The notes beneath the pieces are model-generated. The model was not told the origin of the DNA and did no database searches. It worked only from the letters and a program-made list of their open reading frames with translations. Below, in pieces: positions 4,601-36,700 of a DNA stretch of 64,000 nt. The DNA lies in contig NC_079173.1 of assembly GCF_947568905.1 (NCBI RefSeq), positions 29,202,001 to 29,266,000 of the forward strand, written 5' to 3'. The position numbers and the translations under genes are program-made. The stretch is from Ostrea edulis (taxonomy: Eukaryota). Position 1 is the first letter of the stretch; each line of letters opens with the position of its first letter.

Positions 4601-5325
4601 AGGAATATCATTCAAATAAACGATTGCATTTTGGACACATTTCAGTTATTAATAAGCAGAAAGTATACAAAAGTTTCAATGCTGTTAAACATTTTCGTCC
4701 ACTATGAGCACCTTAGATATAATTAATATCACTATGTCTTTATGTATCATTTTCGGATATCTATTTCTATAATAGAAAAATTATGTATCTACATTAATAA
4801 AGCAAACGCTGGGATTAGAAGGGCTTAGCTTTGCAAATAAAGGGTGAGTGAAAAACAGATGAAAACAAATTCTGAGATAAGGTTTACTTTTTAATAAATA
4901 TGTTACATTTTCATATTTATATGATGAAAAGCTTGCAAGAGTATTCCTAAATTGTCATTTTACAATCATTTGAAAATCAAGTTAGATAGGATGATACAAT
5001 TCACCATCACTCCACCACACTATAGAAACTCATAGCAATATTTCATGCTTTAATAAAAAATGAAATTAACAAATAAATAGGAACTTAATTCAAGAATTTC
5101 GGTAACATTTATGAAAAGAAAAACAACTGACCTGAAGAAGGTGTTGTTATGGATGGGGTGGAGACCTTTGTTGCCGGTGTAGACGGGACTGTGATAGATG
5201 TGGTTCCACTTGGTGTTGATCCACTTGGAGTGGTTATTGGTGTCGATTCAGTTGCTTCAGTTGTAGATGGTGGGGTTTGAGGTTTAACACTAGTTGTTCC
5301 TGTCCAAAGAAATTGATTGTACCAC

Positions 5326-5414
<89 letters not shown>

Positions 5415-7809: not shown

Positions 7810-7855
<46 letters not shown>

Positions 7856-13800: not shown

Positions 13801-15634
13801 CCCCACCCTTCCCACTGGGGGGGACATGATTTTAACAAACTTGAATCTGCATTATGTCAGAAAGCTTTCATGTAAATGTAAACTCCTCTGGACCAATGCT
13901 TCTTGAGAAGAAAACCTTTCAAGATTTTCCTTATATATTTGTGTGTAAACCTTTGATTCCCCTTCGTCGTCTCCCCTTCCCGGGGGGGGGGGGGGGGCGT
14001 GATGTTAACAAACTTGAACTTGCATTATGTCAGGGAGCTGTCATGTAAACTTTTCAGGCTCAGTGAATCTTGAGACAATATTTCAAAAGATTTTCCCTAT
14101 ATATTTATATGTAAAACTTTAATACCTTATTGCAACCCCATCATATCCTTGAGGGTCATGATTTTAACAAACTTGAATCTGTACTATATCAGGAAGCTGC
14201 CATATATGCAAAGGAGAACAATTTATTTTCTGCATAAAAGATGCCTATGTCTGATAACTTATGAAAATGATAACTTTTAGGGAGAATTTTGCAGTACTGT
14301 ATTCGAGATATATTGCCCCAAACTTCATGAAATAAAATAATTTGCTTAAAATTACCACAATGTTGCAATAAATGCTCAAATGTGATATAAAGCACAACCA
14401 TGAATCCAGTACATTATGACATCAATTTTAGAATATCACCATGAAGATTAAATATTGAGAATTTTTCACTTCTCCTGACCTGTCCTGATATCTCCAAACA
14501 AACATATCTTAAATACCAGACTATCAATTTTCAACATACTTTATATATCATAAGAGGGATATGCTTGTGATGAAAGGTGAAGATAACGAACAGTGATCAA
14601 TCTCATAACTCATATAAGCAATACAAAATATGTAGTTGGGCAAACACGGACCCCTGGACACACCAGAGGTGGAATGAGGTGCCTAGGAGGAGTACGCATC
14701 GCCTGTCAACCGGTAACAACCGCCGTGAGCCCTATATCCTGATCAGGTAAACGTAGTTATCCGTAGTCAAAATCAGTGTGCCAAGAACGGCCTAACAATC
14801 TGTATGAAACATGTCAGACAACATTTGACCCAATGATAGGTTGTATTGACCAACTAAATCGTTATAACGACCGTAGAATTTGCGAAATGCTTACTTCAAT
14901 CGAGACTGTTGAAATCCCTGAATTAGTTTCAAGATGGAAACATTGTTTACACTAAGTTTACTATATTTAGTTAAACCCTGTCGTGAAAGTAAACAGACGA
15001 CAAAATTTAAGACCGTCAAAAATGTGCCAATTGAGGGATAAAACTATTCAAAAGAAGGATACAAAGGTGACGATAAAAACCTGCTCACACGCTCTACTAC
15101 ACTAGAACTCAAACTTCATCACTGTCATAGGCTTACAGATATGACCCTGGTTGAACTGTGTTCACGGCATGACGTCAGAGTTGGAAAAGCAAGATAAATT
15201 ATAAACCTGACATTTAGAATTTTTTAACTACATTCACCCTCATTCATTCTCAATGTGCACATAGTATGCTAAGTACTTCGTTACTAGCTTGAAAATACGG
15301 ATGCATATTTAATTACCGTGATAAAATTTAGAAATGAAAGGATTATCTCCCTCACGCATATCTCTTAGACGAATTTGACTCCACTTTTTTGGCACACTGT
15401 TTTGCCATATAATAGCTCTAAAACTTCATTGTTATTTCGGATTTCAAACATTTCGGTCGAGCATCACTGAAGAGACATTATTTGTCGAAATGCACATCTG
15501 GTGAATCAAAATTGTACCGTATAAGTTTTACATACAATATCATTTTTATTACCAAATAGATTGTCAAGTCTTAGATTATCAATTTCTTTCACCAATGTTT
15601 TCAAATAAATATTCAGAGACTGTTACTAGATAAT

Positions 15635-15706
<72 letters not shown>

Positions 15707-18700
15707 TGGGATTTCTTCCTTTCGAATTGAATTGAATGGAAAATATTGCCAAAAACAGATCTCATTTATTGCAGACAGACATATTTTATCCTCCCTACTA
15801 AAATGCTTCTCATGCCAAAATGCTATCAGCACTTTATGATCCATTTCATTTCGCCACCAATGAATAAATACTCCTTGAAAAAGAATCTTAAACATCCCAT
15901 CAAATGGACAGTGAATATTATGGGTCAAGTGAGTGCAATGTAATAAGACAGCATTGACCAAAGTCTACCTGATGGAGTCACACTTGGTGTAACACTTGGT
16001 GTAACAGATGGAGTTGGTGTGGCACTTGGTGTTGCAGATGGAGTCACGCTAGGAGTGATTGATGGTGTAGGTGTAACGCTGGGTGTAACACTTGGTGTAA
16101 AAGATGGAGTCACGCTGGGTGTAACACTTGGTGTAACAGAAGGTGTGACACTTGGTGTAACTGATGGTGTGACACTTGGAGTAACCGATGGTGTGACACT
16201 TGGTGTAACTGATGGTGTGACGCTTGGTGTGACACTTGGAGTAACCGATGGTGTGACACTTGGTGTAACCGATGGTGTGACACTTGGTGTGACAGATGGT
16301 GTTGGTGTAATGCTTGGTGTGGCTTTTTATTGAAGAAAAGAGATATACAGCATTAACTAACTATTAATTGGACGAATAATGCCATTTGATATTTTGTTTT
16401 TCACGGTTAAAGTGAAAGAGACATATAGGGTAAGGTGTACACCAATGAAAGAAGAAGTCATATTATAAAAAAAACCATTCTAACTTTACTCATGATTTCT
16501 TCTTCGTAATAAACAGAACAAAGTACACCATATTTTATCAAGGAAAGTGAAAGGTGAAGATAAGGAGCAGAGGAACTGTAATCAATCTCGTAACTCCTAT
16601 AAAGAATACAAATTACACAGTTGGACAAAAAGAGATATCGGGCACACCAGAGGTGGATTGATGTACATAGGAGGAATAAGCATCCTCTACTGACCGCTCA
16701 CACCCCCAATGAGACATATAGTTTGATCAGGTAATTGGATTTATCGGTAGTCAAAATCACTGTGTTAAGAACGGCCTAACAATCAATATTAAAGACGTCA
16801 GATAGCATTTGACCCAATGATAGTTTGTATTGGCAAACTACATAGTTATAAAGACCGTAGAATTTGGATAGTATATTAACAATGAATCGGAAAGGAACTC
16901 TTCTTTACCAACTTAATTCAATGGAAAATCTTCCCCCAAACAGATTGGATTTCTTGCACACCTATTTTATCCTCCCTACTAAAATGCCTCTCATGCCAAA
17001 CTGTTATCAGCACTAAATGATCAATTTCATTTCGCCACCAATCAATAAATACTCCTTGAAAAAGAATCTTAAACATCCCATCAAATGGACAGTGAATCTT
17101 ATGGGTCAAGTGAGTGCAATGTAATAAGAGCGTATTGAACAAAGTGTACCTGATGGAGTCACGCTTGGTGTAACACTTGGTGTAACAGATGGAGTTGGTG
17201 TGGCACTTGGTGTTACAGATGGAGTCACGCTAGGAGTGACTGATGGTGTAGGTGTAACGCTGGGTGTAACACTTGGTGTAACAGATGGAGTCAAGCTGGG
17301 TGTAACACTTGGTGTAATAGAAGGTGTGACACTTGGTGTAATTGATGGTGTGACACTTGGAGTAACCGATGGTGTGACACTTGGTGTAACCGATGGTGTT
17401 GGTGTAACGCTTGGTGTGACACTTGGAGTAACCGATGGTGTGACACTTGGTGTGACAGATGGTGTTGGTGTAACGCTTGGTGTGACACTTGGTGTAACAG
17501 ATGGAGTTGGTGTGGCACTTGGTGTTGCAGATGGAGTCACGCTAGGAGTGACTGATGGTGTAGGTGTAACGCTGGGTGTAACACTTGGTGTAACAGATGG
17601 AGTCACGCTGGGTGTAACACTTGGTGTAACAGAAGGTGTGACACTTGGTGTAACTGATGGTGTGACACTTGGAGTAACTGATGGTGTGACACTTGGTGTG
17701 ACACTTGGAGTAACCGATGGTGTGACACTTGGTGTAACTGATGGTGTGACGCTTGGTGTGACACTAGGAGTAACCGATGGTGTGACACTTGGTGTAACCG
17801 ATGGTGTTGGTGTAACGCTTGGTGTGACACTTGGAGTAACCGATGGTGTGACACTTGGTGTGACAGATGGTGTTGGTGTAACGCTTGGTGTGACACTTGG
17901 TGTAACAGATGGAGTTGGTGTGGCACTTGGTGTTGCAGATGGAGTCACGCTAGGAGTTACTGATGGTGTAGGTGTAACGCTGGGTGTAACACTTGGTGTA
18001 ACAGATGGAGTCACGCTGGGTGTAACACTTGGTGTAACAGAAGGTGTGACACTTGGTGTAACTGATGGTGTGACACTTGGAGTAACTGATGGTGTGACAC
18101 TTGGTGTGACACTTGGAGTAACCGATGGTGTGACGCTTGGTGTAACTGATGGTGTGACGCTTGGTGTGACACTAGGAGTAACCGATGGTGTGACACTTGG
18201 TGTGACAGATGGTGTTGGTGTAACGCTTGGTGTGGCTTTTTATTGAAGAAAAGAGATATACAGCATTAACTTACCATTAATTGGACGAATAATGCCATTT
18301 GATATTTTGTTTTTCACGGTTAAAGTGAAAGAGACATATAGGGTACGGTGTACACCAGTGAAAGAAGAAGTCATATTAAAAAGAAACCATCCCAACTTTA
18401 CTCATGATTTCTTCTTCGTAATAAACAGAACAAAGTACACCATATTTTATCAAGGAAAGTGAAAGGTGAAGATAAGGAGCAGAGGAACTGTAATCAATCT
18501 CGTAACTCCTATAAAGAATACAAATTACACAGTTGGACAAAAAGGGATATCGGGCACACCAGATGTGGAATGATGTGCATAGGAGGAGTAAGCATCCTCT
18601 AACGACAGCTCACACCCGCCAATGAGACATATAGTTTGATCAGGTAAATGGATGTATCGGTAGTCAAAATCACTGTGTTAAGAACGGCCTAACAATCAAT

Positions 18701-21700
18701 ATTAAACACGTCAGATAGCATTTGACCCAATGATAGTTTGTATTGGCAAACTACATAGTTATAAAGACCGTAGAATTTGGATAGTATATTAACAATGAAT
18801 CGGAAAGGAACTCTTCTTTACCAACTTAATTCAATGGAAAATCTTCCCTAAACAGATTGGATTTCTTCAAGACCTATTTTATCCTCCCTACTAAAATGCC
18901 TCTCATGCCAAAATGCTATCAGCACTAAATGATCCATTTCATTTCGCCACCAATGGATAAATACTCCTTGAAAAAGAATCTTAAACATCCCATTAAATGG
19001 ACAGTGAATCTTATGGGTCAAGTGAGTGCAATGTAATAAGAGCGCATTGAACAAAGTGTACCTGATGGAGTCACGCTTGGTGTCACAGATGGAGTTGGTG
19101 TGGCACTTGGTGTTGCAGATGGAGTCACGCTAGGAGTTACTGATGGTGTAGGTGTAACGCTGGGTGTAACACTTGGTGTTGCAGATGGAGTCACGCTGGG
19201 TGTAACACTTGGTGTAACAGAAGGTGTGACACTTGGTGTAACTGATGGTGTGACACTTGGAGTAACCGATGGTGTGACACTTGGTGTAACTGATGGTGTG
19301 ACGCTTGGTGTGACACTTGGTGTAACCGATGGTGTTGGTGTAACGCTTGGTGTGACACTTGGAGTAACCGATGGTGTGACACTTGGTGTGACAGATGGTG
19401 TTGGTGTAACGCTTGGTGTGGCTTTTTATTGAAGAAAAGAGATATACAGCATTAACTAACTATTAATTGGACGAATAATGCCATTTGATATTTTGTTTTT
19501 CACGGTTAAAGTGAAAGAGACATATAGGGTAAGGTGTACACCAGTGAAAGAAGAAGTCATATTAAAAAGAAACCATTCCAACTTTACTCATGATTTCTTC
19601 TTCGTAATAAACAGAACAATGTACACCATATTTTATCAAGGAAAGTGAAAAGTGAAGATAAGGAACAGTGGAACTGTAATCAATCTCGTAACTCCTATAA
19701 AGAATACAAATTACACAGTTGGACAAAAAGGCATATCGGGCACACCAGAGGTGGAATGATGTACATAGGAGGAGTAAGCATCCTCTAACGACAGCTCACA
19801 ACCCCCAATGAGACATATAGTTTGATCAGGTAAATGGATTTATCGGTAGTCAAAATCACTGTGTTAAGAACGGCCTAACAATCAATATTAAACACGTCAG
19901 ATAGCATTTGACCCAATGATAGTTTGTATTGGCAAACTACATAGTTATAAAGACCGTAGAATTTGGATAGTATATTAACAATGAATCGGAAAGGAACTCT
20001 TCTTTACCAACTTAATTCAATGGAAAATCTTCCCCCAAACAGATTGGATTTCTTCAAGACATATTTTATCCTCCCTACTAAAATGCCTCTCATGCCAAAA
20101 TGCTATCAGCACTAAATGATCCATTTCATTTCGCCACCAATCAATAAATACTCCTTGAGAAAGAATCTTAAACATCCCATCAAATGGACAGTGAATCTTA
20201 TGGGTCAAGTGAGTGCAATGTAATAAGAGCGCATTGAACAAAGTGTACCTGATGGAGTCACGCTTGGTGTAACACTTGGTGTAACAGATGGAGTTGGTGT
20301 GGCACTTGGTGTTACAGATGGAGTCACGCTAGGAGTGACTGATGGTGTAGGTGTAACGCTGGGTGTAACACTTGGTGTAACAGATGGAGTCACGCTGGGT
20401 GTAACACTTGGTGTAATAGAAGGTGTGACACTTGGTGTAACTGATGGTGTGACACTTGGAGTAACCGATGGTGTGACACTTGGTGTAACTGATGGTGTGA
20501 CGCTTGGTGTGACACTTGGAGTAACCGATGGTGTGACACTTGGTGTAACCGATGGTGTTGGTGTAACGCTTGGTGTGACACTTGGAGTAACCGATGGTGT
20601 GACACTTGGTGTGACAGATGGTGTTGGTGTAACGCTTGGTGTGACACTTGGTGTAACAGATGGAGTTGATGTGGCACTTGGTGTTGCAGATGGAGTCACG
20701 CTAGGAGTGACTGATGGTGTAGGTGTAATGCTGGGTGTAACACTTGGTGTAACAGATGGAGTCACGCTGGGTGTAACACTTGGTGTAACAGAAGGTGTGA
20801 CACTTGGAGTAACTGATGGTGTGACACTTGGAGTAACTGATGGTGTGACACTTGGTGTGACACTTGGAGTAACCGATGGTGTGACACTTGGTGTAACTGA
20901 TGGTGTGACGCTTGGTGTGACACTAGGAGTAACCGATGGTGTGACACTTGGTGTAACCGATGGTGTTGGTGTAACGCTTGGTGTGACACTTGGAGTAACC
21001 GATGGTGTGACACTTGGTGTGACAGATGGTGTTGGTGTAACGCTTGGTGTGACACTTGGTGTAACAGATGGAGTTGGTGTGGCACTTGGTGTTGCAGATG
21101 GAGTCACGCTAGGAGTGACTGATGGTGTAGGTGTAACGCTGGGTGTAACACTTGGTGTAACAGATGGAGTCACGCTGGGTGTAACACTTGGTGTAACAGA
21201 AGGTGTGACACTTGGTGTAACTGATGGTGTGACACTTGGAGTAACTGATGGTGTGACACTTGGAGTAACTGATGGTGTGACACTTGGTGTGACACTTGGA
21301 GTAACCGATGGTGTGACACTTGGTGTAACTGATGGTGTGACGCTTGGTGTGACACTAGGAGTAACCGATGGTGTGACACTTGGTGTAACCGATGGTGTTG
21401 GTGTAACGCTTGGTGTGACACTTGGAGTAACCGATGGTGTGACACTTGGTGTGACAGATGGTGTTGGTGTAACGCTTGGTGTGGCTTTTTATTGAAGAAA
21501 AGAGATATACAGCATTAACTAACTATTAATTGGACGAATAATGCCATTTGATATTTTGTTTTTCACGGTTAAAGTGAAAGAGACATATAGGGTAAGGTGT
21601 ACACCAGTGAAAGAAGAAGTCATATTAAAAAGAAACCATTCCAACTTTACTCATGATTTCTTCTTCGTAATAAACAGAACAATGTACACCATATTTTATC

Positions 21701-24700
21701 AAGGAAAGTGAAAAGTGAAGATAAGGAACAGTGGAACTGTAATCAATCTCGTAACTCCTATAAAGAATACAAATTACACAGTTGGACAAAAAGGCATATC
21801 GGGCAAACCAGAGGTGGAATGATGTACATAGGAGGAGTAAGCATCCTCTAACGACAGCTCACAACACCCAATGAGACATATAGTTTGATCAGGTAAATGG
21901 ATTTATCGGTAGTCAAAATCACTGTGTTAAGAACGGCCTAACAATCAATATTAAAGACGTCAGATAGCATTTGACCCAATGATAGTTTGTATTGGCAAAC
22001 TATATAGTTATAAAGACCGTAGAATTTGGATAGTATATTAACAATGAATCGGAAAGGAACTCTTCTTTACCAACTTAATTCAATGGAAAATCTTCCCTAA
22101 ACTGATTGGATTTCTTCAAGACATATTTTATCCTCCCTACTAAAATGCCTCTAATGCCAAAATGCTATCAGCACTAAATGATCCATTTCATTTCGCCACC
22201 AATCAATAAATACTCCTTGAGAAAGAATCTTAAACATCCCATCAAATGGACAGTGAATCTTATGGGTCAAGTGAGTGCAATGTAATAAGAGCGCATTGAA
22301 CAAAGTGTACCTGATGGAGTCACGCTTGGTGTAACACTTGGTGTAACAGATGGAGTTGGTGTGGCACTTGGTGTTACAGATGGAGTCACGCTAGGAGTGA
22401 CTGATGGTGTAGGTGTAACGCTGGGTGTAACACTTGGTGTAACAGATGGAGTCACGCTGGGTGTAACACTTGGTGTAATAGAAGGTGTGACACTTGGTGT
22501 AACTGATGGTGTGACACTTGGAGTAACCGATGGTGTGACACTTGGTGTAACTGATGGTGTGACGCTTGGTGTGACACTTGGAGTAACCGATGGTGTGACA
22601 CTTGGTGTAACCGATGGTGTTGGTGTAACGCTTGGTGTGACACTTGGAGTAACCGATGGTGTGACACTTGGTGTGACAGATGGTGTTGGTGTAACGCTTG
22701 GTGTGGCTTTTTATTGAAGAAAAGAGATATACAGCATTAACTAACTATTAATTGGACGAATAATGCCATTTGATATTTTGTTTTTCACGGTTAAAGTGAA
22801 AGAGACATATAGGGTTAGGTGTACACCAGTGAAAGAAGAAGTCATACTAAAATGAAACCATTCCAACTTTACTCATGATTTCTTCTTCGTAATAAACAGA
22901 ACAATGTACACCATATTTTATCAAGGAAAGTGAAGATAAGGAACAGTGGAACTGTAATCAATCTCGTAACTCCTATAAAGAATACAAATTACACAGTTGG
23001 ACGAAAAGGGATATCGGGCACACCAGAGGTGGAATGATGTACATAGGAGGAGTAAGCATCCTCTAACGACAGCTCACAACCCCCAATGAGACATATAGTT
23101 TGATCAGGTAAATGGATTTATCGGTAGTCAAAATCACTGTGTTAAGAACAGCCTAACAATCAATATTAAACACGTCAGATAGCATTTGACCCAATGATAG
23201 TTTGTATTGGCAAACTACATAGTTATAAAGACCGTAGAATTTGGATAGTATATTAACAATGAATCGGAAAGGAACTCTTCTTTACCAACTTAATTCAATG
23301 GAAAATCTTCCCCCAAACAGATTGGATTTCTTCAAGACATACTTTATCCTCCCTACTAAAATGCCTCTCATGCCAAAATGCTATCAGCACTAAATGATCC
23401 ATTTCATTTCGCCACCAATCAATAAATACTCCTTGAAAAAGAATCTTAAACAGCCCATTAAATGGACAGTGAATCTTATGGGTCAAGTGAGTGCAATGTA
23501 ATAAGAGCGCATTGAACAAAGTGTACCTGATGGAGTCACGCTTGGTGTAACAGATGGAGTTGGTGTGGCACTTGGTGTTGCAGATGGAGTCACGCTAGGA
23601 GTTACTGATGGTGTAGGTGTAACGCTGGGTGTAACACTTGGTGTTGCAGATGGAGTCACGCTGGGTGTAACACTTGGTGTAACAGAAGGTGTGACACTTG
23701 GTGTAACCGATGGTGTGACACTTGGAGTAACTGATGGTGTGACACTTGGTGTGACACTTGGAGTAACCGATGGTGTGACACTTGGTGTAACCGATGGTGT
23801 TGGTGTAACGCTTGGTGTGACACTTGGAGTAACCGATGGTGTGACACTTGGTGTGACAGATGGTGTTGGTGTAACGCTTGGTGTGCCTTTTTATTGAAGA
23901 AAAGAGATATACAGCATGAACTTACTATTAATTGGAGGAATAATGCCATTTGATATTTTGTTTTTCACGGTTAAAGTGAAAGAGACATATAGGGTGAGAT
24001 GTACACTAGTGAAAGAAAAAGTCATACTATAAAGAAACCATTCCAACTTTACTCATGATTTCTTCTTCGTAATAAACAGAACAATGCACACCATATTTTA
24101 TCAAGCAAAGTGAAAGGTGAAGATAACGACCAGTGGAACTGTAATCAATCTCGTAACTCCTATAAGGAATACAAATTACACTGTTGGACAAAAAGGGATA
24201 TCGGGCACACCAGATGTGGAATGATGTACATAGGAGGAGTAAGCATCCCCTACCGACCGCTTACACACCCAATGAGACATATAGTTTGATCAGGTGAATG
24301 GAATTATGGGTAGTCAAAACCACTGTGTTAAGAACGGCCTAACAATCAATATTAAACACGTCAGATAGCATTTGACCCAATGATAGTTTGTATTGGCAAA
24401 CTACATAGTTATAAAGACCATAAAATTTGTATAGTATATTAACAATGAATCGGGAAAGAACTCTTCTTTACCAACTTAATTCAATGGAAAATCTTGCCCC
24501 AAACAGATTGGATTTCGTGCACTCCTATTTTATCCTCCTTACTAAAATGCCTCTCATGCCAAAATGCTATCAGCACTAAATGATCCATTTTATTTCGCCA
24601 CCAATCAATAAATACTCCTTGAAAAAGAATCTTAACATCCCATCAAATGGACAGTGAATCTTATGGGTCAAGTGAGTGCAATGTAATAAGAGCGCATTGA

Positions 24701-27700
24701 ACAAAGTGTACCTGATGGAGTCACGCTTGGTGTAACACTTGGCGTAACAGATGGAGTCACACTGGGTGTAACACTTGGTGTAACAGAAGGTGTGACACTT
24801 GGAGTAACCGATGGTGTGACACTTGGTGTAACCGATGGTGTTGGTGTAACGCTTGGTGTGACACTTGGAGTAACCGATGGAGTTGGTGTGGCACTTGGTG
24901 TTGAAGATGGAGTCACGCTAGGAGTGACTGATGGTGTAGGTGTAACACTGGGTGTAACACTTGGTGTAACAGATGGGGTCACGCTGGGTGTAACACTTGG
25001 TGTAACTGATGGTGTGACACTTGGAGTAACTGATGGTGTGACACTTGGAGTAACTGATGGTGTGACACTTGGTGTGACACTTGGAGTAACCGATGGTGTG
25101 ACACTTGGTGTAACTGATGGTGTGACGCTTGGTGTGACACTAGGAGTAACCGATGGTGTGACACTTGGTGTAACCGATGGTGTTGGTGTAACGCTTGGTG
25201 TGACACTTGGAGTAACCGATGGTGTGACACTTGGTGTGACAGATGGAGTTGGTGTAACGCTTGGTGTGGCTTTTTATTGAAGAAAAGAGATATACAGCAT
25301 TAACTTACTATTAATTGGACGAATAATGCCATTTGATATTTTGTTTTTCACGGTTAAAGTGAAAGAGACATATAGGGTGAGATGTACACCAGTGAAAGAA
25401 GAAGTCATATTAAAAAGAAACCATTCCAACTTTACTCATGATTTCTTCCTGGTAATAAACAGAACAATGTACACCATATTTTATCAAGCAAAGTGAAAAG
25501 TGAGGATAACGAACAGTGGAACTGTAATCAATCTCGTAACTTCTATAAAGAATACAAATTACACAGTTGGACAAAAAGGGATATCGGGCACACCAGAGGT
25601 GGAATAATGTACATAGGAGGAGTAAGCATCCTCTACCGACAGCTCACAACCCCCAATGAGACATATAATTTGTTCAGGTAAATGGATTTATCGGTAGTCA
25701 AAATCACTGTGTTAAGAACGGTCTAACAATCAATATTAAACACGTCAGATAGCATTTGACCCAATGATAGTTTGTATTGGCAAACTACATAGTTATAAAG
25801 ACCGTAGAATTTGGATAGTATATTAACAATGAATCGGAGAGGAACTCTTCTTTACCAACTTAATTCAATCGAAAATCTTGTTCCAAACAGATTGGATTTC
25901 TTCAAGACATATTTTATCCTCCCTATAAAATGCCTCTCATGCCAAAATGCTATCAGCACTAAATGATCCATTTCATTTCGCCACCAATTAATAAATACTC
26001 CTTGAAAAAGAATCTTAAACATCCCATTAAATGGACAGTGAATCTTATGGGTCAAGTGAGTGCAATGTAATAAGAGCGCATTGAACAAAGTGTACCTGAT
26101 GGAGTCACACTTGGTGTAACAGATAGAGTTGGTGTGGCACTTGGTGTTGCAGATGGAGTCACGCTAGGAGTGACTGATGGTGTAGGTGTAACGCTGGGTG
26201 TAACACTTGGTGTAACAGATGGAGTCACGCTGGGTGTAACACTTGGTGTAACAGAAGGTGTGACTGATGGTGTGACACTTGGAGTAACCGATGGTGTGAC
26301 ACTTGGTGTAACTGATGGTGTGACGCTTGGTGTGACACTTGGAGTAACCGATGGTGTGACACTTGGTGTAACCGATGGTGTTGGTGTAACGCTTGGTGTG
26401 ACACTTGGAGTAACCGATGGTGTGACACTTGGTGTGACAGATGGTGTTGGTGTAACGCTTGGTGTGACACTTGGTGTAACAGATGGAGTTGGTGTGGCAC
26501 TTGGTGTTGCAGATGGAGTCACGCTAGGAGTGACTGATGGTGTAGGTGTAACGCTGGGTGTAACACTTGGTGTAACAGATGGAGTCACGCTGGGTGTAAC
26601 ACTTGGTGTAACAGAAGGTGTGACACTTGGTGTAACTGATGGTGTGACACTTGGAGTAACTGATGGTGTGACACTTGGAGTAACTGATGGTGTGACACTT
26701 GGTGTGACACTTGGAGTAACCGATGGTGTGACACTTGGTGTAACTGATGGTGTGACGCTTGGTGTGACACTAGGAGTAACCGATGGTGTGACACTTGGTG
26801 TAACCGATGGTGTTGGTGTAACGCTTGGTGTGACACTTGGAGTAACCGATGGTGTGACACTTGGTGTGACAGATGGAGTTGGTGTAACGCTTGGTGTGGC
26901 TTTTTATTGAAGAAAAGAGATATACAGCATTAACTTACTATTAATTGGACGAATAATGCCATTTGATATTTTGTTTTTCACGGTTAAAGTGAAAGAGACA
27001 TATAGGGTGAGATGTACACTAGTGAAAGAAAAAGTCATATTATAAAGAAACCATTCCAACTTTCCTCATGATTTTTTCTTCGTAATAAACAGAACAATGT
27101 ACACCATATTTTATCAAGCAAAGTGAAAGGTGAAGATAACGACCAGTGGAACTGTAATCAATCTCGTAACTCCTATAAGGAATACAAATTACACAGTTGG
27201 ACAAAAAGGGATATCGGGCACACCAGATGTGGAATGATGTATATAGGAGGAGTAAGCATCCTCAACCGACCGCTTACACATCCAGTGAGACATATAGTTT
27301 GATCAGGTAAATGGAATTATGGGTAGTCAAAACCACTGTGTTAAGAACGGCCTAACAATCAATATTAAACACGTCAGATAGCATTTGACTTAAAGTTGAT
27401 AGTTTGTATTGGCAAACTACATAGTTATAAAGACCATAAAATTTGGATAGTATATTAACAATGAATCGGAAAAGAACTCTTCTTTACCAACTTAATTCAA
27501 TGGAAAATCTTGCCCCAAACAGATTGGATTTCTTGCACTCCTATTTTATCCTCCTTACTAAAATGCCTCTCATGCCAAAATGCTATCAGCACTAAATGAT
27601 CCATTTTATTTCGCCACCAATCAATAAATACTCCTTGAAAAAGAATCTTAACATCCCATCAAATGGACAGTGAATCTTATGGGTCAAGTGAGTGCAATGT

Positions 27701-30700
27701 AATAAGAGCGCATTGAACAAAGTGTACCTGATGGAGTCACGCTTGGTGTAACAGATGGAGTTGGTGTGGCACTTGGTGTTGCAGATGGAGTCACGCTAGG
27801 AGTGACTGATGGTGTAGGTGTAACGCTGGGTGTAACACTTGGTGTTGCAGATGGAGTCACGCTGGGTGTAACACTTGGTGTAACAGAAGGTGTGACACTT
27901 GGTGTAACTGATGGTGTGACACTTGGAGTAACCGATGGTGTGACACTTGGTGTAACTGATGGTGTGACGCTTGGTGTGACACTTGGAGTAACCGATGGTG
28001 TGACACTTGGTGTAACCGATGGTGTTGGTGTAACGCTTGGTGTGACACTTGGAGTAACCGATGGTGTGACACTTGGTGTGACAGATGGTGTTGGTGTAAC
28101 GCTTGGTGTGGCTTTTTATTGAAGAAAAGAGATATACAGCATTAACTAACTATTAATTGGACGAATAATGCCATTTGATATTTTGTTTTTCACGGTTAAA
28201 GTGAAAGAGACATATAGGGTAAGGTGTACACCAGTAAAAGAAGAAGTCATATGAAAAAGAAACCATTCCAACTTTACTCATGATTTCTTCTTCGTAATAA
28301 ACAGAACAATGTACACCATATTTTATCAAGGAAAGTGAAAAGTGAAGATAAGGAACAGTGGAACTGTAATCAATCTCGTAACTCCTATAAAGAATACAAA
28401 TTACACAGTTGGACAAAAAGGGATATCGGGCACACCAGAGGTGGAATGATGTACATAGGAGGAGTAAGCATCCTCTAACGACAGCTCACAACCCCCAATG
28501 AGACATATAGTTTGATCAGGTAAATGGATTTATCGGTAGTCAAAATCACTGTGTTAAGAACGGTCTAACAATCAATATTAAACACGTCAGATAGCATTTG
28601 ACCCAATGATAGTTTGTATTGGCAAACTACATAGTTATAAAGACCGTAGAATTTGGATAGTATATTAACAATGAATCGGAGAGGAACTCTTCTTTACCAA
28701 CTTAATTCAATGGAAAATCTTGTCCCAAACAGATTGGATTTCTTCAAGACATATTTTATCCTCCCTATAAAATGCCTCTCATGCCAAAATGCTATCAGCA
28801 CTAAATGATCCATTTCATTTCGCCACCAATCAATAAATACTCCTTGAAAAAGAATCTTAAACATCCCATTAAATGGACAGTGAATCTTATGGGTCAAGTG
28901 AGTGCAATGTAATAAGAACGCGTTGAACAAAGAATACCTGATGGAGTCACGCTTGGTGTAACACTTGGTGTAACAGATGGAGTTGGTGTGGCACTTGGTG
29001 TTACATATGGAGTCACGCTAGGAGTTACTGATGGTGTAGGTGTAACGCTGGGTGTAACACTTGGTGTAACAGATGGAGTCACGCTGGGTGTAACACTTGG
29101 TGTAACTGATGGTGTGACACTTGGAGTAACCGATGGTGTGACACTTGGTGTAACTGATGGTGTGATGCTTGGTGTGACACTTGGAGTAACCGATGGTGTG
29201 ACACTTGGTGTAACCGATGGTGTTGGTGTAACGCTTGGTGTGCCTTTTTATTGAAGAAAAGAGATATACAGCATGAACTTACTATTAATTAGACGAATAA
29301 TGCCATTTGATATTTTGTTTTTCACGGTTAAAGTGAAAGAGACATATAGGGTGAGATGTACACCAGTGAAAGAAAAAGTCATACTATAAAAAAACCATTC
29401 CAACTTTACTCATGATTTATTCCTCGTATTAAACAGAACAATGTACACCATATTTTATCAAGCAAAGTGAAAGGTGAAGATAACAAACAGTGGAACTGTA
29501 ATCAATCTCGTAACTCCTATAAGGAATACAAATTACACAGTTGGACAAAAAGGGATATCGGGCACACCAGATGTGGAATGATGTACAGAGAAGGAGTAAG
29601 CATCCTCTACCGACCGCTTACACACCCAATGAGACATATAGTTTGATCAGGTGAATGGATTTATGCGTAGTCAAAACCACTGTGTTAAGAACGGCCTAAC
29701 AATCAATATTAAACACGTCAGATAGCATTTGACCCAATGACAGTTTGTATTGGCAAACTACATAGTTATAAAGACCATAAAATTTGTATAGTATATTAAC
29801 AATGAATCGGAAAGGAACTCTTCTTTACCAACTTAATTCAATGGAAAATCTTGTCCCAAACAGATTGGATTTCTTCAAGACATATTTTATCCTCCCTACT
29901 AAAATGCCTCTCATGCCAAAATGCTATCAGCACTAAATGATCCATTTCATTTCGCCACCAATCAATAAATACTCTTTGAAAAAGAATCTTAACATCCCAT
30001 CAAATGGACAGTGAATCTTATGGGTCAAGTGAGTGCAATGTAATAAGAGAGCATTGAACAAAGTGTACCTGATGGAGTCACGCTTGGTGTAACACTTGGC
30101 GTAACAGATGGAGTCACACTGGGTGTAACACTTGGTGTAACAGAAGGTGTGACACTTGGTGTGACACTTGGAGTAACCGATGGTGTGACACTTGGTGTAA
30201 CCGATGGTGTTGGTGTAACGCTTGGTGTGACACTTGGAGTAACCGATGGAGTTGGTGTGGCACTTGGTGTTGCAGATGGAGTCACGCTAGGAGTGACTGA
30301 TGGTGTAGGTGTAACACTGGGTGTAACACTTGGTGTAACAGATGGGGTCACGCTGGGTGTAACACTTGGTGTAACTGATGGTGTGACACTTGGAGTAACT
30401 GATGGTGTGACACTTGGAGTAACTGATGGTGTGACACTTGGTGTGACACTTGGTGTAACTGATGGTGTGACGCTTGGTGTGACATTAGGAGTAACCGATG
30501 GTGTGACACTAGGAGTAACCGATGGTGTGACACTTGGTGTAACCGATGGTGTTGGTGTAACGCTTGGTGTGACACTAGGAGTAACCGATGGTGTGACACT
30601 AGGAGTAACCGATGGTGTGACACTTGGTGTAACCGATGGTGTTGGTGTAACGCTTGGTGTGACACTTGGAGTAACCGATGGTGTGACACTTGGTGTGACA

Positions 30701-33700
30701 GATGGTGTTGGTGTAACGCTTGGTGTGCCTTTTTATTGAAGAAAAGAGATATACAGCATGAACTTACTATTAATTGGAGGAATAATGCCATTTGATATTT
30801 TGTTTTTCACGGTTAAAGTGAAAGAGACATATATGGTAAGATGTACTCCAGTGAAAGAAGAAGTCATATTCAAAAGAAACCATTCCAACTTTACACATGA
30901 TTTCTTCCTCGTAATAAACAGAACAATGTACACCATATTTTATCAAGCAAAGTGAAAAGTTAGGATAACGAACAGTGGAACTGTAATCAATCTCGAACTC
31001 CTATAAAGAATACAAATTACACTGTTGGACAAAAAGGGATATCGGGCACACCAGAGGTGGAATAATGTACATAGGAGGAGTAAGCATCCTCTACCGACAG
31101 CTCACAACCCCCAATGAGACATATAGTTTGTTCAGGTAAATGGATTTATCGGTAGTCAAAATCACTGTGTTAAGAACGGTCTAACAATCAATATTAAACA
31201 CGTCAGATAGCATTTGACCCAATGATAGTTTGTATTGGCAAACTACATAGTTATAAAGACCGTAGAATTTGGATAGTATATTAACAATGAATCGGAGAGG
31301 AACTCTTCTTTACCAACTTAATTCAATGGAAAATCTTGCCCCAAACAGATTGGATTTCTTCAAGACATATTTTATCCTCCCTACTAAAATGCCTCTCATG
31401 CCAAAATGCTATCAGCACTAAATGATCCATTTCATTTCGCCACCAATCAATAAATACTCCTTGAAAAAGAATCTTAAACATCCCATTAAATGGACAGTGA
31501 ATCTTATGGGTCAAGTGAGTGCAATGTAATAAGAGCGCGTTGAACAAAGAGTACCTGATGGAGTCACGCTAGGAGTTACTGATGGCGTAGGTGTAACGCT
31601 GGGTGTAACACTTGGTGTAACAGATGGAGTCACGCTGGGTGTAACACTTGGTGTAACTGATGGTGTGACACTTGGAGTAACCGATGGTGTGACACTTGGT
31701 GTTACTGATGGTGTGACGCTTGGTGTAACCGATGGTGTTGGTGTAACGCTTGGTGTGCCTTTTTATTGAAGAAAAGAGATATACAGCATTAACTTACTAT
31801 TAATTGGACGAATAATGCCATTTGATATTTTGTTTTTCACGGTTAAAGTGAAAGAGACATATAGGGAAGATGTACACCAGTGAAAGAAGTCATATTATAA
31901 AGAAACCATTCCAACTGTACTCATGATTTCTTCCTCGTAATAAACAGAACAATCTACACCATATTTTATCAAGGAAAGTGAAAGGTGAAGATAACAAACA
32001 GTGGAACTGTAATCAATCTCGTAACTCCTATAAGGAATACAAATTACACAGTTGCACAGAAAGGGATATCGGGCACACCAGAGGTGGAATGATGTACATA
32101 GGAGGAGTAACCATCCTCTAACGACCGCTCACAACCCCCAAAGGTGTGACACTTGGAGTAATTGATGGAGTCACGCTTGGTGTAGCAGATGGTGTGACAC
32201 TTGGTGTAACTGATGGTGTGACGCTAGGTGTGAAACTTGGAGTAACCGATGGTGTGACACTTGGTGTAACTGAGGGTGTGACACTTGGTGTTACAGATGG
32301 TGTTGGTGTGACGCTTGGTGTAACAGATGGATTCACGCTGGGAGTAACACTTGGAGTAACAGATGATGTGACACTTGGAGTAACCGATGGTGTGACACTT
32401 GGTGTAACTGATGGTGTGACGCTTGGTGTGACACTAGTAGTAACCGATGGTGTGACACTTGGTGTAACCGATGGTGTTGGTGTAACGCTTGGTGTGACAC
32501 TTGGAGTAACCGATGGTGTTACACTTGGTGTGACAGATGGTGTTGGTGTAACGTTTGGTGTGATACTTGGAGTACCAGATGGGGTAACGCTAGGTGTAAC
32601 AGATGGTGGTGGTGTGACACTTGGTGTAACTGACGGTGAGGTACTTGGAGTACCTGATGGTGTGACGCTTGGTGTGAAACTTACAGTAACTGATGGTGTG
32701 ACGCTTGGTGTGACACTTGGAGTAACCGATGGTGTGCCACTTGGTGTAACAGATGATGTGACGCTTGGCGTAACCGATCGTGTTGGTGTAACGCTTGGTG
32801 TGACACTTGTAGTAACCGATGGTGTTACACTTGGTGTAACTGATGGTGTGACACTTGGTGTGACACTAGGAGTAACCGATTGTGTGACACTTGGTGTGAC
32901 AGATGGTGTTGGTGTGACACTTGTGGCTAGTTGTTGATGAAAGATACATAGAGCATTAACTCACTAATAATTGGATGAATACAATGTAATACCATATGAT
33001 ATTTTCTTTTCCACGGTTAAAGTGAAAGAGAGATAGAGGGTATGATGTACACCGGGACAGAAGTAGAAGTCATATTATGAAGAATCCATTTCAACTTTAC
33101 ACATGGTTTGTTGCTGGGAATTATCGGCACAATTTACACGATATTTATCAAAGCAAAGTGAAAGGCGAAGAACAGTTGTCAATCTCATAACTCCCATAAG
33201 GAATACAAAATAAACAGTTGGATAAATTGAGATCTCAGACACACCAGAGGTGGGATTAGCTATGAGTCATGTATCTTGATAAGGTAAGCGGAGTTTACCG
33301 TAGTCAAAATCAGTGTGTTAAGAACTGCCTAACAATCGGTATGAAACACGTCAGACATCATTTGACCCGATAGTAAAATGTATTGGTAACCTAGGTCATT
33401 GTAGACACAATAGAATTCGGATTGTGAATTAATTGCAAAGGGTTATTCTTTCCAAACTTAATTGAATGGAAAATATTGCCACAAACAGATCTGATTTATT
33501 GCAGACATTTTTCCTCCTCTCCACTAAAATGCCTCTCTTGCTAAAATGTTATTAATACTAAATGATCCTTTTCATTTTGCAACCAATAAAATATCCGCCT
33601 TGAAAAATAATTCCACAAAAACCATCAAATGGCAAGCGAACCTTGTTGATCAAGTGAGTGCAATGTAATAAAAGCGAATTGAACAAAGTGTACCTGATGG

Positions 33701-36700
33701 AGTCACGCTTGGTGTGACACTAGGAGTAACCGATGGAGTTGGTGTAACGCTTGGTGTGACACTTGGTGTAACAGATGGTGTTGGTGTGACACTTGGTGTG
33801 CCTATTAATTGAGGAAAAGATATATACAGCATCAATTTACTAATAATTGGATGAATAATGCTATTTGATACTTCCTTTTTTAAGTGAAAGTGAAGGAGAA
33901 AGTGTAAGCTTTGAAAGCAGTTGAAATAGTAGTTATCAAAATGTTATCAAGAAGTGAACAGTTCTATTTTGACAAATTTAATAACTACCATTTTGGTCCC
34001 ATACTGATACAAAATATATAACCCTGGGATCATCAAATTTAATATTTTGGTAGATGTCTTTCTGCTCTACATCACGATACGTTTATTATTTCTTATACAT
34101 GTGTGGTTGTAGAGAAGAATATTTTTGAAAATTGGTCAATTTTTGGCAGATTTTACTGGAATGGTAGTTATGAAAAAGTTGAATTTTTTTTATTGTTAAC
34201 ACACGACGGAAGTCGAACGCATACAAATTGCAGTAGGTCAATCGAGTTTACTTAAGTGGCCCAAAACATTCATAAGTATAGAGTACTTACTTTTCGTTGT
34301 CATGGTCGTTGTCGTTGTTGCTGGAAATACGAATTCAAGATATATTTACTAAACAGTGAAATAACATACGTATAGTGAATCATAAATGACAATTTTATAC
34401 ATTACTGTATACAAATCAAACATTATAAACCATTCCAAACAGTGGGAAGTGTGAGGCACAGTCACTTATGATCACTGTGTGAATTAGTTGTGACAGCATG
34501 AATTATCGAGTATGACTCAATATATGTACCTTACCGTTTTATATCAAGAAGTTCCTTTGAATTAGTGCGTAAATAAATCAAACTGAAAACTACCACACAA
34601 TAAATAATAGTTGATGTCAACAGTTCAATGATATTATTCGTCAATATATGTACTATACTAATACAACTAAACAGCAAATTAAAATGCATTATGTCCAGGG
34701 ACCAAACAATGATGTAACGGTGTACATGTTTCAGCGTCTACAATTAAAATGAACTGAATTAAAAATACATTAAACACAGAGGCAAACATATTACAAGGAA
34801 AAGGTAAGGGTTGAGCGAAAAGAAATATCCTGATATTTATAACTGCATATAATATCAAATATCACAACATTAAACTATAAACGGGGAATAAGATTAATTG
34901 CAAACAAATAGTGATTTACAGAATAAACATAAGAATAATTTTCAGAATTTGAGTTTTGGTATTCCAATATGCATACATACCCTTTTCAATACATGCTTCG
35001 ATTCCCAAGTTATTGACAGAAATGCTATCTGTTCCATCTGGTTGTGGTTTGAAGACAATCTCTAATTCTTTGCCTTTCAAGCCCGTGAAGTCTGTCTCAA
35101 CAGTACTCTCCTCACTTGGATTGGTTACGATCTGCAAATGTCATACAAAATGCATACATAAAACGTCTCAAACATGAATGATGAAAATCAATTGCACTCA
35201 AAATTACTCGGGACTACATCGTACCTCTTCCTTTCTCAACTCAGTATCCTCTGGAGTTGTAACAATGAAGGTAACGGTTTGTGTATTTTTGGTGGTCACC
35301 GTGATCTTTCCTATGGGAGATTTATCATCCTTGTCTTTAAAGACAATCCTGATTTTCACCTCCTGGCCGGGCTCGCCAGTTACCGTTCCCAGGGTACCAT
35401 TTAGAGGAGACGAAGTAGGAGACTGATGTTCGTCAACAAAGACCTCTACCAGATCGGGTAATTCGTCTATACCAGCATCGTCCAACATGGGAACAGGACA
35501 GACTGAAAGAAGGAAAAACACAAATCTCTCAACAAGCATTCTTCTTGTACCTCTACTCCATGTCTTCATTTCAAATTTGATCTTTGTAATCTTAGTCAAT
35601 TCCATACAACAATTGCTTTTATTGAGGTGTTCTGCGACACTTGTAGCAATTTGAAACATCTTCAAAGAACAATATCGTTAAACGCAATTTTTGTTGTTCT
35701 TTTAGACATATGCTTACAAGGAAGAAGGTTTGTAGTGTATTCTTCCCATATGTCGGTTTTTATACTTCATATCAAGGGTAATTCTTTTTATATACTCAAC
35801 AAACAAAGAAACGCATATTCAGATTATACATAATAATTTAATTCTTCAGTTTACATTTTATTTTTATTTTTTAAAAGTTTAAATGCAGTAAACGGTCCTA
35901 TGATCAAAATCAAACATGTCTCATGTTGCTGTGTTGAACAGATAGGAATAATATCACAGCTTCTCTCGGTCCATACAAGGTAACAATTTAATGACTGCAT
36001 TACAGTGAGTTTTAATATCGCGTATGTCCTCCGTTTGCATCAATTCCAGACTGAACACGTCTTGTCATAGAGTTAATAAGCTTGTTGATGGTAACCTGAG
36101 AGATATTGTTCCATTCCTGCAACAAGGCCTGCTCTAAATCCTGGATGGTGGTTGGTGGACTGGGACGGCGTCTAACTCATTTATCCAGCTCATCCCATAA
36201 ATGTTCAATTGGATTAAGGTCTGGTGAGAACGCTGGCCATGGAAGAACATCCACGTTGTTCGTCTGCAGAAAATCCGAGCACACCCTTGCCACATGCGGC
36301 CTTGTGTTGTCCTGTTGCAGAGTCAGATTGTGCTGATGGACAAATGGAACAGCCAAAGGAGCAAGAATTTCATCACGATATTTTCGTGCATTCATATTGC
36401 CATGAATTACGTGGAGTGGTGTTCTCCTTCCGTAAGCAATACCTCCCCACACCATTACGTTTCCACCACCAAAGCGATCTCTTTCAATGACACAATAGTC
36501 TGCAAAACGCTCATTCTTCCGGCGATACACACGTGAACGACCATCAGCTCTATACAAGTTGAATTTCGACTCATCTGTGAAGAGAACTTGATGCCATTGT
36601 CGTCGCCTCCAAATTCTAGGGCCATGCTGTCTTAACCAATCCATTCGTCCCTGGTGACGTCTCGGCGTTAGTGGATTTCCAATATATGGACGTCGTGCAC

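What the first reader, a model, noticed from the sequence alone, without database searches (positions are those of the whole stretch)
15969..31758. Two-level VNTR: fixed ~826-bp introns around PTS exons that vary six-fold in length
Seen: 12 cassette exons of 354, 1086, 360, 1236, 396, 360, 558, 804, 384, 306, 660 and 204 nt, all multiples of 6, separated by introns of 820-828 bp. Established: vertebrate gel-forming mucins usually encode their PTS tract in one huge exon. Inference: here the tract expands both by slippage inside exons and by whole-cassette duplication, and its length could additionally be set by cassette skipping.
Basis: partly seen in the sequence, partly recalled or inferred. 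Interest (0 to 1): 0.7.

Follow-up and report, generated by a model that had tools for sequence, protein, structure and literature searches.

The report
Oyster mucin exon-intron cassette array
A giant oyster mucin-like gene encodes part of its sugar-carrying (Thr-Pro-Ser-Val)n stalk as 12 exons of very unequal length separated by near-identical ~826-bp introns; the layout is real, but it is a known kind of gene architecture, and splicing and variation between animals remain untested.

Summary
On the minus strand, 12 open exons of 204-1236 nt, all multiples of 6, encode almost pure (TPSV)n. They are separated by 11 introns of 820-828 bp that are 93.8-99.2% identical. All have CAG|GTA donors, a pyrimidine tract with AG acceptors, and phase 1-1.

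The organism is an oyster, not a vertebrate. The gene appears to be giant (>140 kb), with LDLa, a repeated 143-aa domain, and TSP1/TIL/VWC/cystine-knot exons on the same strand.

The two-level idea is supported from within the array. A three-cassette block (~3.8 kb) was duplicated. Since then its introns changed by 1-7 bp, while its exons changed by 12-78 bp, always in multiples of 6.

Most of the six-fold exon range has another cause. The long exons are two or three whole exon-equivalents joined without an intron, giving 19 equivalents in 12 exons. I read this as intron loss by recombination between the repeats that flank each intron (about 0.65).

Polymorphism ("VNTR") and cassette skipping are untested, and the RNA evidence is only suggestive. 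Iterated homogenised introns are known from spider silk genes, schistosome SmPoMuc and chicken Muc13. This scan also found a similar array in another gene of this genome (s1-301750).

The parts
31555..31758 (-). E1, cassette exon, 204 nt, one truncated exon-equivalent (lacks the first 66-nt sub-repeat)
30729..31554 (-). I1, intron, 826 bp; closest to I5 (97.8%)
30069..30728 (-). E2, 660 nt, two exon-equivalents; type-2 intron-less junction near 30244; paralogue of E6
29244..30068 (-). I2, intron, 825 bp, subfamily B (with I4 and I6)
28938..29243 (-). E3, 306 nt, one exon-equivalent lacking the first 66 nt; paralogue of E7
28112..28937 (-). I3, intron, 826 bp; paralogue of I7 (97.9%)
27728..28111 (-). 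E4, 384 nt, one exon-equivalent; paralogue of E8 (99.0%, one 12-nt indel)
26900..27727 (-). I4, intron, 828 bp, subfamily B
26096..26899 (-). E5, 804 nt, two exon-equivalents (432+372); intron-less junction type 1 at 26467; its first 632 nt differ from E9 at 2 positions
25270..26095 (-). I5, intron, 826 bp
24712..25269 (-). E6, 558 nt, two exon-equivalents; type-2 junction near 24875
23887..24711 (-). I6, intron, 825 bp, subfamily B
23527..23886 (-). E7, 360 nt, one exon-equivalent
22707..23526 (-). I7, intron, 820 bp; 22921-23243 is a ~320-bp dispersed repeat with thousands of ~80%-identical copies genome-wide
22311..22706 (-). E8, 396 nt, one exon-equivalent; differs from the last 396 nt of E9 at 1 position
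21485..22310 (-). I8, intron, 826 bp; 99.2% identical to I9
20249..21484 (-). E9, 1236 nt, three exon-equivalents (432+408+396); type-1 junctions at 21052 and 20644
19422..20248 (-). I9, intron, 827 bp
19062..19421 (-). E10, 360 nt, one exon-equivalent
18236..19061 (-). I10, intron, 826 bp
17150..18235 (-). E11, 1086 nt, three exon-equivalents (342+408+336); type-1 junctions at 17893 and 17485
16323..17149 (-). I11, intron, 827 bp; an edge copy, among the more diverged (12 private differences, second to I7)
15969..16322 (-). E12, 354 nt, last cassette exon, one exon-equivalent
13020..15968 (-). 2949-bp intron after the array; its first 255 bp (88%) and last ~70 bp (82%) are homologous to the 826-bp intron
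31759..33801 (-). Older edge of the same family: exon 33694-33801 (108 nt), intron 32931-33693 (77% identical), exon 32142-32926 whose donor and first ~440 intron bases are deleted, and the remnant intron 31759-32141

Best explanation
This is a tandem array of exon-plus-intron cassettes inside a giant, probably secreted, mucin-like gene of an oyster, on the minus strand. Each exon encodes an O-glycosylation-type (TPSV)n tract. All exons are phase 1-1, so the spliced product is one uninterrupted PTS stalk of about 2,236 residues from these 12 exons.

The array grows and shrinks by homologous recombination or slippage between direct repeats at several nested scales:
- 12-nt units (SVTP);
- 66-78-nt sub-repeats;
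- whole exon-equivalents of ~340-430 nt;
- single cassettes of ~1.2-2 kb;
- a three-cassette block of ~3.8 kb.

The introns look fixed in length because they are young, non-repetitive copies (1-6% diverged), not because their length is constrained.

The longest exons (E5, E9, E11, and differently E2 and E6) are two or three exon-equivalents joined without an intron. The most likely cause is an in-frame genomic deletion of the intron by recombination between the PTS repeats that bracket it. An 11-nt direct repeat sits 11 nt upstream of every donor and 2 nt downstream of every acceptor.

Shown: the anatomy, coding constraint, block duplication, indel asymmetry and intron-less junctions. Inferred: the direction (intron loss rather than gain), that the cassettes belong to one gene with the cystine-knot end, and that they are spliced as drawn.
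For: Geometry and splice sites.

Coding constraint:
- 471 SVTP units are written in 25 different DNA versions, and both serine codon families are used (AGY 305, TCN 221).
- Variation sits at third codon positions, while positions 7, 8, 10 and 11 of the 12-nt unit are invariant in 512 units.
- Paralogous stretches differ at 33 synonymous and 8 non-synonymous codons.
- There are no stops in 6,708 nt in the TPSV frame.

Cassette duplication: identity matrix and tree, and mosaic informative sites.

Block duplication: [I1 E2 I2 E3 I3 E4] aligns colinearly with [I5 E6 I6 E7 I7 E8] at 96.4-99.0%. Exon indels are all multiples of 6 (78, 12, 12, 66, 12, 12) and intron indels are 1, 1, 1 and 7.

Fused exons:
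- A probe made of the last 90 nt of E7 plus the first 90 nt of E8 matches internal sites of E9, E11 and E5 at 166-167 of 168 nt, with one 12-nt gap at the junction.
- Exon-start and exon-end marker motifs recur 2-3 times in the long exons, in the right order.
- The same test in the second array gives only background, 87-88%.

Recent exchange: E8 differs from the end of E9 at 1 of 396 positions, and E5 from E9 at 2 of 632, while the upstream flanking introns I4 and I8 differ by 5.3%.

The intron is ancestral: homologous intron ends occur in the second array, in the 2949-bp intron and in the 77% upstream copy.

Gene context: TSP_1, TIL, VWC, Cys_knot and Ldl_recept_a exons lie on the same strand, as do VWD hits about 75-85 kb beyond the window's high-coordinate end.

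Reads: two runs guessed to be RNA cover exon bins at word depth ~900-8000 but give 0-1 in most repeat-free intron bins. A DNA run covers those intron bins and an exon/intron boundary.
Against: - No exon-exon joint at the predicted sites was listed in the reads. The two 'RNA?' runs are only guessed to be RNA and carry another organism label.
- No annotated or related protein could be recovered to check the model.
- Cassette order rests on one assembly. Independent DNA contigs confirm local sequence only.
- The donor GTACAC lacks the usual G at +5, and the acceptor is AAG, so the sites are weak.
- One upstream family member (32142-32926) has no canonical donor, so the gene may be partly decayed or may need a cryptic site.
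- The direction of the intron-less junctions is not proven. They could be uninterrupted sites of an older higher-order repeat.
Confidence: 0.75

Rival explanations
1. The intron-less junctions are ancestral. The PTS exon originally carried a ~400-nt higher-order repeat, an intron entered one unit, and unequal crossing-over then produced exons with one, two or three units. On this reading the array shows intron spread, not intron loss.
For: The intron-less site and the intron-bearing site differ only by the intron plus 12-24 nt of ordinary repeat units, so the comparison has no built-in direction. All five type-1 junctions are identical, as expected if one old junction was copied.
Against: Homologous introns sit at the same codon position in the diverged upstream copy (77%), in the 2949-bp intron and in the second array, so the intron predates this array's 94-99%-identical units. 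Two different junction types both join an exon-end-proximal motif to an exon-start-proximal motif, as deletion across an intron predicts. Recurrent deletion at the same 11-nt direct repeat would also give identical junctions.
Confidence: 0.25
2. The array is a decaying or non-expressed part of the locus, that is, pseudo-exons in a satellite-like repeat. Its open frames persist only because the copies are young.
For: No run on record as RNA holds the stretch. One family member has lost its donor. The splice sites are weak. The mirror frame on the opposite strand is also open.
Against: Variation among 512 repeat units is almost entirely synonymous, and both serine codon families are used, which takes long-term selection on the peptide. 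Differences between paralogous stretches are 33 synonymous to 8 non-synonymous. All six exon indels since the block duplication keep the frame. All 12 donors and acceptors are intact. Exon-biased, intron-poor coverage is seen in two probable RNA runs.
Confidence: 0.1
3. The exon length differences or the cassette order are assembly artefacts of a collapsed or mis-joined repeat.
For: Arrays with 94-99%-identical units are hard to assemble. I could not lay long genomic reads on it.
Against: There are no N runs and no frameshift in 6.7 kb of repetitive coding sequence. Each intron carries private and shared variants in a consistent mosaic. The three-cassette blocks are colinear. Contigs from an independent DNA run match four intron or boundary stretches without a difference (pieces 10 and 12-14).
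Confidence: 0.07

Closest known systems
Spider silk genes with iterated, homogenised introns (flagelliform spidroin; Argiope MaSp2), PMC9779670
   Same: Repetitive low-complexity coding exons are delimited by near-identical introns (97.6% on average within a gene in MaSp2). Alternating intron types form multi-cassette core units. Unequal crossing-over and slippage are invoked. Here the introns are 93.8-99.2% identical, and types alternate over I1-I6.
   Different: The protein class is different (mucin-type PTS rather than fibroin). The exons here differ six-fold in length, and several are multi-unit fusions without an intron. The introns here carry an old dispersed repeat.
Schistosoma mansoni polymorphic mucins (SmPoMuc), PMC2576457
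   Same: The mucin repeat is encoded by tandem ~1-kb genomic units of one exon plus intron. The intron parts are >94% identical. Unequal crossing-over or gene conversion is proposed, and repeat number differs between individuals.
   Different: The SmPoMuc exon 2 is a fixed 27 bp. Here the exons are 204-1236 nt and are themselves internally repetitive and unstable. Polymorphism was not tested here.
Chicken Muc13 PTS domain encoded by multiple exons, PMC1552070
   Same: [quoted passage not shown] The authors already proposed that alternative splicing could set PTS length.
   Different: Muc13 is a transmembrane SEA mucin of a vertebrate. No variable exon length or intron-less fusions were reported in the passages read.
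Vertebrate gel-forming mucins (MUC2, MUC5AC, MUC5B, MUC6) with a single central VNTR exon, PMC6269512 and PMC13345508 (abstracts)
   Same: There is a PTS stalk of tandem repeats. A cystine-knot and VWC end, and VWD exons, lie on the same strand near this locus.
   Different: In the vertebrate genes the PTS tract is one large exon. Here it is cut into cassettes. The locus also carries TSP1, TIL and LDLa exons and a 143-aa repeated domain, more like SCO-spondin-type mosaics.
MUC4-like cassette mucin elsewhere in this oyster genome (scan note s1-301750)
   Same: Same genome and same architecture of about 30 exon-plus-intron units.
   Different: It is a different gene on another chromosome piece. 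Its units are reported as near-identical, with no variable exon length or fused units noted.

Membership tests
Exon-intron cassette repeat gene under concerted evolution (silk Flag/MaSp2, SmPoMuc type) | The tandem genomic unit is one coding exon plus one intron | tested here: met
   12 exons and 11 introns in strict alternation
Exon-intron cassette repeat gene under concerted evolution (silk Flag/MaSp2, SmPoMuc type) | The iterated introns are highly similar within the gene | tested here: met
   93.8-99.2% pairwise identity. The edge copy is 77% and the flank 88%
Exon-intron cassette repeat gene under concerted evolution (silk Flag/MaSp2, SmPoMuc type) | The exons are symmetric and in frame, so units can be added or removed | tested here: met
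   All are phase 1-1, multiples of 6 and free of stops
Exon-intron cassette repeat gene under concerted evolution (silk Flag/MaSp2, SmPoMuc type) | The cassettes are spliced into mature mRNA | tested here: inconclusive
   Exon-rich, intron-poor coverage in two runs only guessed to be RNA. No exon-exon joint was listed
VNTR in the population sense | Copy number or length differs between individuals or haplotypes | not tested
   The single reads call returned only short contigs and about 27 raw reads. No spanning record was found
Gel-forming mucin (VWD - PTS - VWC - cystine knot) | Long PTS domain | tested here: met
   The 12 exons give 2,224 whole codons (about 2,236 residues spliced), of which 98% are T, P, S or V. 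More PTS exons lie on both sides
Gel-forming mucin (VWD - PTS - VWC - cystine knot) | C-terminal VWC and cystine-knot domain in the same protein | tested here: inconclusive
   Pfam Cys_knot (E 4.6e-6) and VWC (below cut-off) exons lie on the same strand about 50 kb downstream. Continuity of the transcript is not shown
Gel-forming mucin (VWD - PTS - VWC - cystine knot) | N-terminal VWD assemblies in the same protein | tested here: inconclusive
   VWD hits on the same strand at C10:29340108-29350515, about 106-117 kb upstream of the array. The link to this gene is not shown
Gel-forming mucin (VWD - PTS - VWC - cystine knot) | PTS tract in one large central exon (the usual vertebrate layout) | tested here: not met
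   The tract is split into at least 20 exons in two cassette families

The most novel reading that the evidence does not exclude
The cassette exons are alternatively skipped, so that one gene yields mucin stalks of many lengths, and introns are being lost recurrently by recombination between the repeats that flank them. That would make this locus a live series of imprecise intron losses inside one gene. The donor-less family member at 32142-32926 would then have to be skipped, or rescued by the in-phase GT at 32654, for the reading frame to survive.
Probability: 0.25. Interest if true: 0.6.

Novelty: new member of a known kind. Interest (0 to 1): 0.35.

Why it matters
The locus shows, inside one gene, how a mucin stalk changes length. 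A datable three-cassette duplication gives an internal control: repetitive exons gained or lost 12-78 bp, always in frame, while the neighbouring introns barely changed. The intron-less junctions offer a testable case of imprecise, repeat-mediated intron loss. Mucin length affects barrier and lubrication properties, so in a filter-feeding bivalve such a gene could be a source of heritable, and perhaps splice-regulated, variation in mucus. The architecture itself is already known from silk genes, SmPoMuc and chicken Muc13, so the value lies in detail and as a study system, not as a new principle.

Tried and rejected
- Word-index protein search with the E9 translation: it returned only unrelated bacterial and phage proteins with Pro/Thr linkers (checked). 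It says nothing about orthologues.
- Exhaustive representative search with the neighbouring 143-aa domain, meant to reach orthologous loci in other oysters: six short fragments only. The two contigs I fetched were 1.4-1.7 kb and uninformative, so no cross-species comparison of the cassette layout was possible.
- Sequencing runs: no holder is on record as RNA.
- Reads laid on 19300-25269: short contigs, heavy multi-mapping among cassettes, and no spanning record. One joint in a DNA run (21052 to 24712) looked at first like a new fusion. It is explained by an ordinary repeat variant that also occurs in the 2964-nt exon.
- tRNA scan of an intron for a SINE head: nothing found.
- Fused-junction test in the second array: background only, so exon length there varies by internal expansion.
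- Length constraint on the intron: rejected, because small indels do occur (1-7 bp) and the copies are simply young.
Exons were searched singly by reference. The only joined object was a 180-nt junction probe used inside a script for alignment within the window.
Full report
**1. What is there**

Stop-free frames on the minus strand each begin just after a pyrimidine-rich tract ending in AAAAG. They end at CCATCAG followed by GTACAC.

Taking AG and GT as splice sites gives 12 exons of 204, 660, 306, 384, 804, 558, 360, 396, 1236, 360, 1086 and 354 nt in transcription order. I call them E1 to E12. The 11 introns between them (I1 to I11) measure 820-828 bp.

- Every intron interrupts a codon after its first base, so the junction codon becomes GCC (Ala) or GGC (Gly).
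- All exons are therefore symmetric, phase 1-1.
- The window holds no N.

**2. Is it coding, and on which strand?**

Of the six frames, only the TPSV frame and its mirror on the other strand are open in all 12 exons. Canonical splice signals exist only for the minus strand.

- The peptide is almost pure (TPSV)n, punctuated by extra TP and by SATP. Of 2,224 whole codons, only 43 encode anything other than T, P, S or V.
- The DNA is far less uniform. The 471 SVTP units occur in 25 nucleotide versions. Serine uses both AGY (305) and TCN (221) codons, and valine uses four codons.
- In 512 aligned units, variation is confined to third positions and the serine switch. Four positions never vary.
- Paralogous stretches that align without gaps differ at 33 synonymous and 8 non-synonymous codons.

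This is the signature of selection on the peptide, not of a non-coding satellite.

**3. Organism and gene**

Earlier notes of this scan, and the labels of the sequencing runs, identify the genome as an oyster's, ~895 Mb. I fetched 40 kb on each side.

In the direction of transcription, the same strand carries:
- giant PTS exons of up to 2,702 codons;
- an LDL-receptor class A exon;
- about 20 copies of a ~1.53-kb unit with a 143-aa domain (scan note s1-301917 calls it discoidin-like; I did not test that);
- the cassette array of this finding;
- a 2,964-nt PTS exon;
- a second cassette array;
- five cassettes of another PTS type;
- exons matching TSP_1, TIL, TSP_1, TSP_1, VWC (below cut-off) and Cys_knot.

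VWD matches lie on the same strand about 75-85 kb beyond the window's upper end. The locus therefore looks like one giant secreted mosaic, mucin-like with SCO-spondin-like parts. That all of this is one transcript is an inference.

**4. The cassettes are copies of each other**

- The introns are 93.8-99.2% identical.
- The only matches elsewhere in the genome come from a ~320-bp dispersed repeat embedded in each intron. It has thousands of copies at about 80% identity.
- The tree and the informative sites show clades (I1,I5), (I8,I9) and (I2,(I4,I6)), with mosaic patterns that indicate exchange.
- Over I1 to I6, two intron types alternate.
- The copies at the edges are much older: 77% for the intron at 32931-33693, and 88% for the first 255 bp of the intron after E12. 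This is the edge effect expected when unequal exchange homogenises the middle of an array (the argument as set out in PMC2576457).

**5. A built-in experiment supports two levels**

The segment I1-E2-I2-E3-I3-E4 aligns colinearly with I5-E6-I6-E7-I7-E8. All six features are 96.4-99.0% identical, so a block of three cassettes (~3.8 kb) was duplicated.

| Since the duplication | Indels (bp) | Over |
|---|---|---|
| Introns | 1, 1, 1, 7 | ~2.5 kb |
| Exons | 78, 12, 12, 66, 12, 12 | ~1.2 kb |

Every exon indel is a multiple of 6.

Exon length is therefore much less stable than intron length, and it changes by whole repeat units. The near-constant 826 bp needs no constraint: the introns are young and not internally repetitive. 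The multiple-of-6 rule follows from the building blocks, SVTP (12 nt) and TP (6 nt). It also holds for the seven other PTS exons mapped.

**6. Where the six-fold range really comes from**

A probe made of the last 90 nt of E7 joined to the first 90 nt of E8 matches internal positions of E9, E11 and E5 at 166-167 of 168 nt. The single gap is 12 nt, exactly at the junction.

Marker motifs behave the same way. The motifs that in single-unit exons occur only at the start (positions 3 and 69) and only ~50-60 nt before the end recur in order:
- three times in E9 and E11;
- twice in E5;
- in a second configuration in E2 and E6.

So E9 is 432+408+396, E11 is 342+408+336, and E5 is 432+372. The 12 exons hold 19 exon-equivalents. 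The same probe test in the second array gives only the background of 87-88%.

Tracts inside these exons are almost identical to other cassettes:
- E8 against the last 396 nt of E9: 1 difference;
- E5 against E9 over the first 632 nt: 2 differences;
- the E11 middle unit against the E9 middle unit: 3 differences.

Yet the introns upstream of E5 and E9 differ by 5.3%. Exchange therefore runs mainly through the exons.

**7. Direction of the intron-less junctions (inference, about 0.65)**

- Every intron is bracketed by the same 11-nt direct repeat. It ends 11 nt before the donor and starts 2 nt after the acceptor.
- Deletion between these repeats in a cassette with the E8-type end reproduces the type-1 junction with one synonymous difference.
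- Relative to the spliced message it removes 24 nt in frame, or 12 nt relative to the shorter E7-type end.
- The type-2 junction in E2 and E6 joins a motif ~40 nt before an exon end to a motif ~45 nt after an exon start, at a shared CCATC.
- Both junction types thus join end-proximal to start-proximal sequence, as deletion across an intron predicts.
- Homologous intron ends in the second array, in the 2949-bp intron and in the 77% copy show that the intron is older than these units.
- The loss is imprecise and flanked by direct repeats. This fits the genomic-deletion or microhomology models rather than the reverse-transcriptase model, as these are set out in PMC4683709.
- The rival, an old higher-order repeat into which the intron spread, is not excluded.

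**8. Expression**

One search for runs found 18 DNA holders of the species and none on record as RNA. It also found two low-share runs guessed to be RNA under another organism label.

Laid on 19300-25269:
- The two guessed-RNA runs cover exon bins at word depth ~900-8000. They also cover the dispersed-repeat part of the introns.
- They give 0-1 in most repeat-free intron bins. The exception is one bin at an intron's 3' end, at ~420.
- A DNA run covers those intron bins at 155-920 and includes a contig across the E8 acceptor.

This is what an abundant spliced transcript would give. But the contigs are 60-130 nt and most fit several places, and no exon-exon joint at a predicted site was among those listed. 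Splicing is likely but not shown. Skipping is only frame-compatible, and polymorphism is untested.

**9. Comparison with what is known**

- Iterated, homogenised introns that delimit repetitive exons, including alternating intron types and the proposal that they guide unequal exchange, are described for spider MaSp2 and flagelliform silk genes (PMC9779670).
- SmPoMuc mucins of Schistosoma carry tandem ~1-kb units, each with a 27-bp exon, and introns more than 94% identical (PMC2576457).
- Chicken Muc13 has a multi-exon PTS domain. Its authors already suggested that alternative splicing sets PTS length (PMC1552070).
- This scan found a similar array in a MUC4-like gene of the same genome (s1-301750).

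The present array is a further member of this kind. It sits in a VWD/cystine-knot-type locus whose vertebrate analogues use one giant exon. Its particular features are the strongly unequal exons, the intron-less fusions, and the clean internal contrast between exon and intron indels.

**10. Verdict**

- Observation: confirmed.
- Interpretation: partly supported.
- Novelty: modest.
- Interest: 0.35.

Noticed in passing
window 1-1671 and beyond, to G000:C10:29192695 (window -9306): There is a second cassette family in the same gene. Its exons are 1248, 984, 936, 984 and 1938 nt, all multiples of 6, and its introns are fixed at 1222-1225 bp. Two of the 984-nt exons are 100% identical. The intron ends are homologous to the 826-bp intron. 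No intron-less junction was detected.
   Followed up: partly
window 32142-32926 (-): This cassette exon has lost its 3' end, its donor and the first ~440 bp of its intron to a deletion, and reading through hits a stop. An in-phase donor-like CAG|GTAC lies inside the exon at 32654. The exon must be skipped or cryptically spliced if the gene is intact (compare scan note s1-302339).
   Followed up: partly
window 22921-23243 (in I7; the same position in every 826-bp intron): A ~320-bp dispersed repeat with thousands of ~80%-identical copies on all chromosomes. It is also present in the 77%-identical upstream intron, so it was inserted before the array expanded. No tRNA-like head was found.
   Followed up: partly
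G000:C10:29340108-29350515 (-), and window -27000 to -35200 (L002, L006): VWD matches lie upstream, and TSP_1, TIL, VWC and Cys_knot exons lie downstream, all on the gene's strand. An LDLa exon is at window 71400-71687. This suggests a gene of about 185 kb with a mucin/SCO-spondin-like mosaic.
   Followed up: partly
window -14045 to -21432 (L001, L006): Five further tandem cassettes encode a different PTS exon of about 240-290 aa, each beginning WIATTSEGTES, with a period of ~1.65 kb.
   Followed up: no
window 36180-37037 (-): An open frame with Tc1/mariner-type transposase domains (HTH_Tnp_Tc3_2, DDE_3) is inserted at the low-coordinate edge of the 1.53-kb domain array.
   Followed up: no
window 35000-66200 (-): The 143-aa domain of the 1.53-kb array has only six short relatives (68-273 aa) among 1.84 billion representative proteins, and no Pfam match above noise.
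   Followed up: partly
window 15640-15703 and 5331-5410: Perfect (GA)32 and (TC)40 microsatellites. The first sits in the intron just outside the last cassette. SmPoMuc genomic repeats are likewise separated by GA microsatellites.
   Followed up: no
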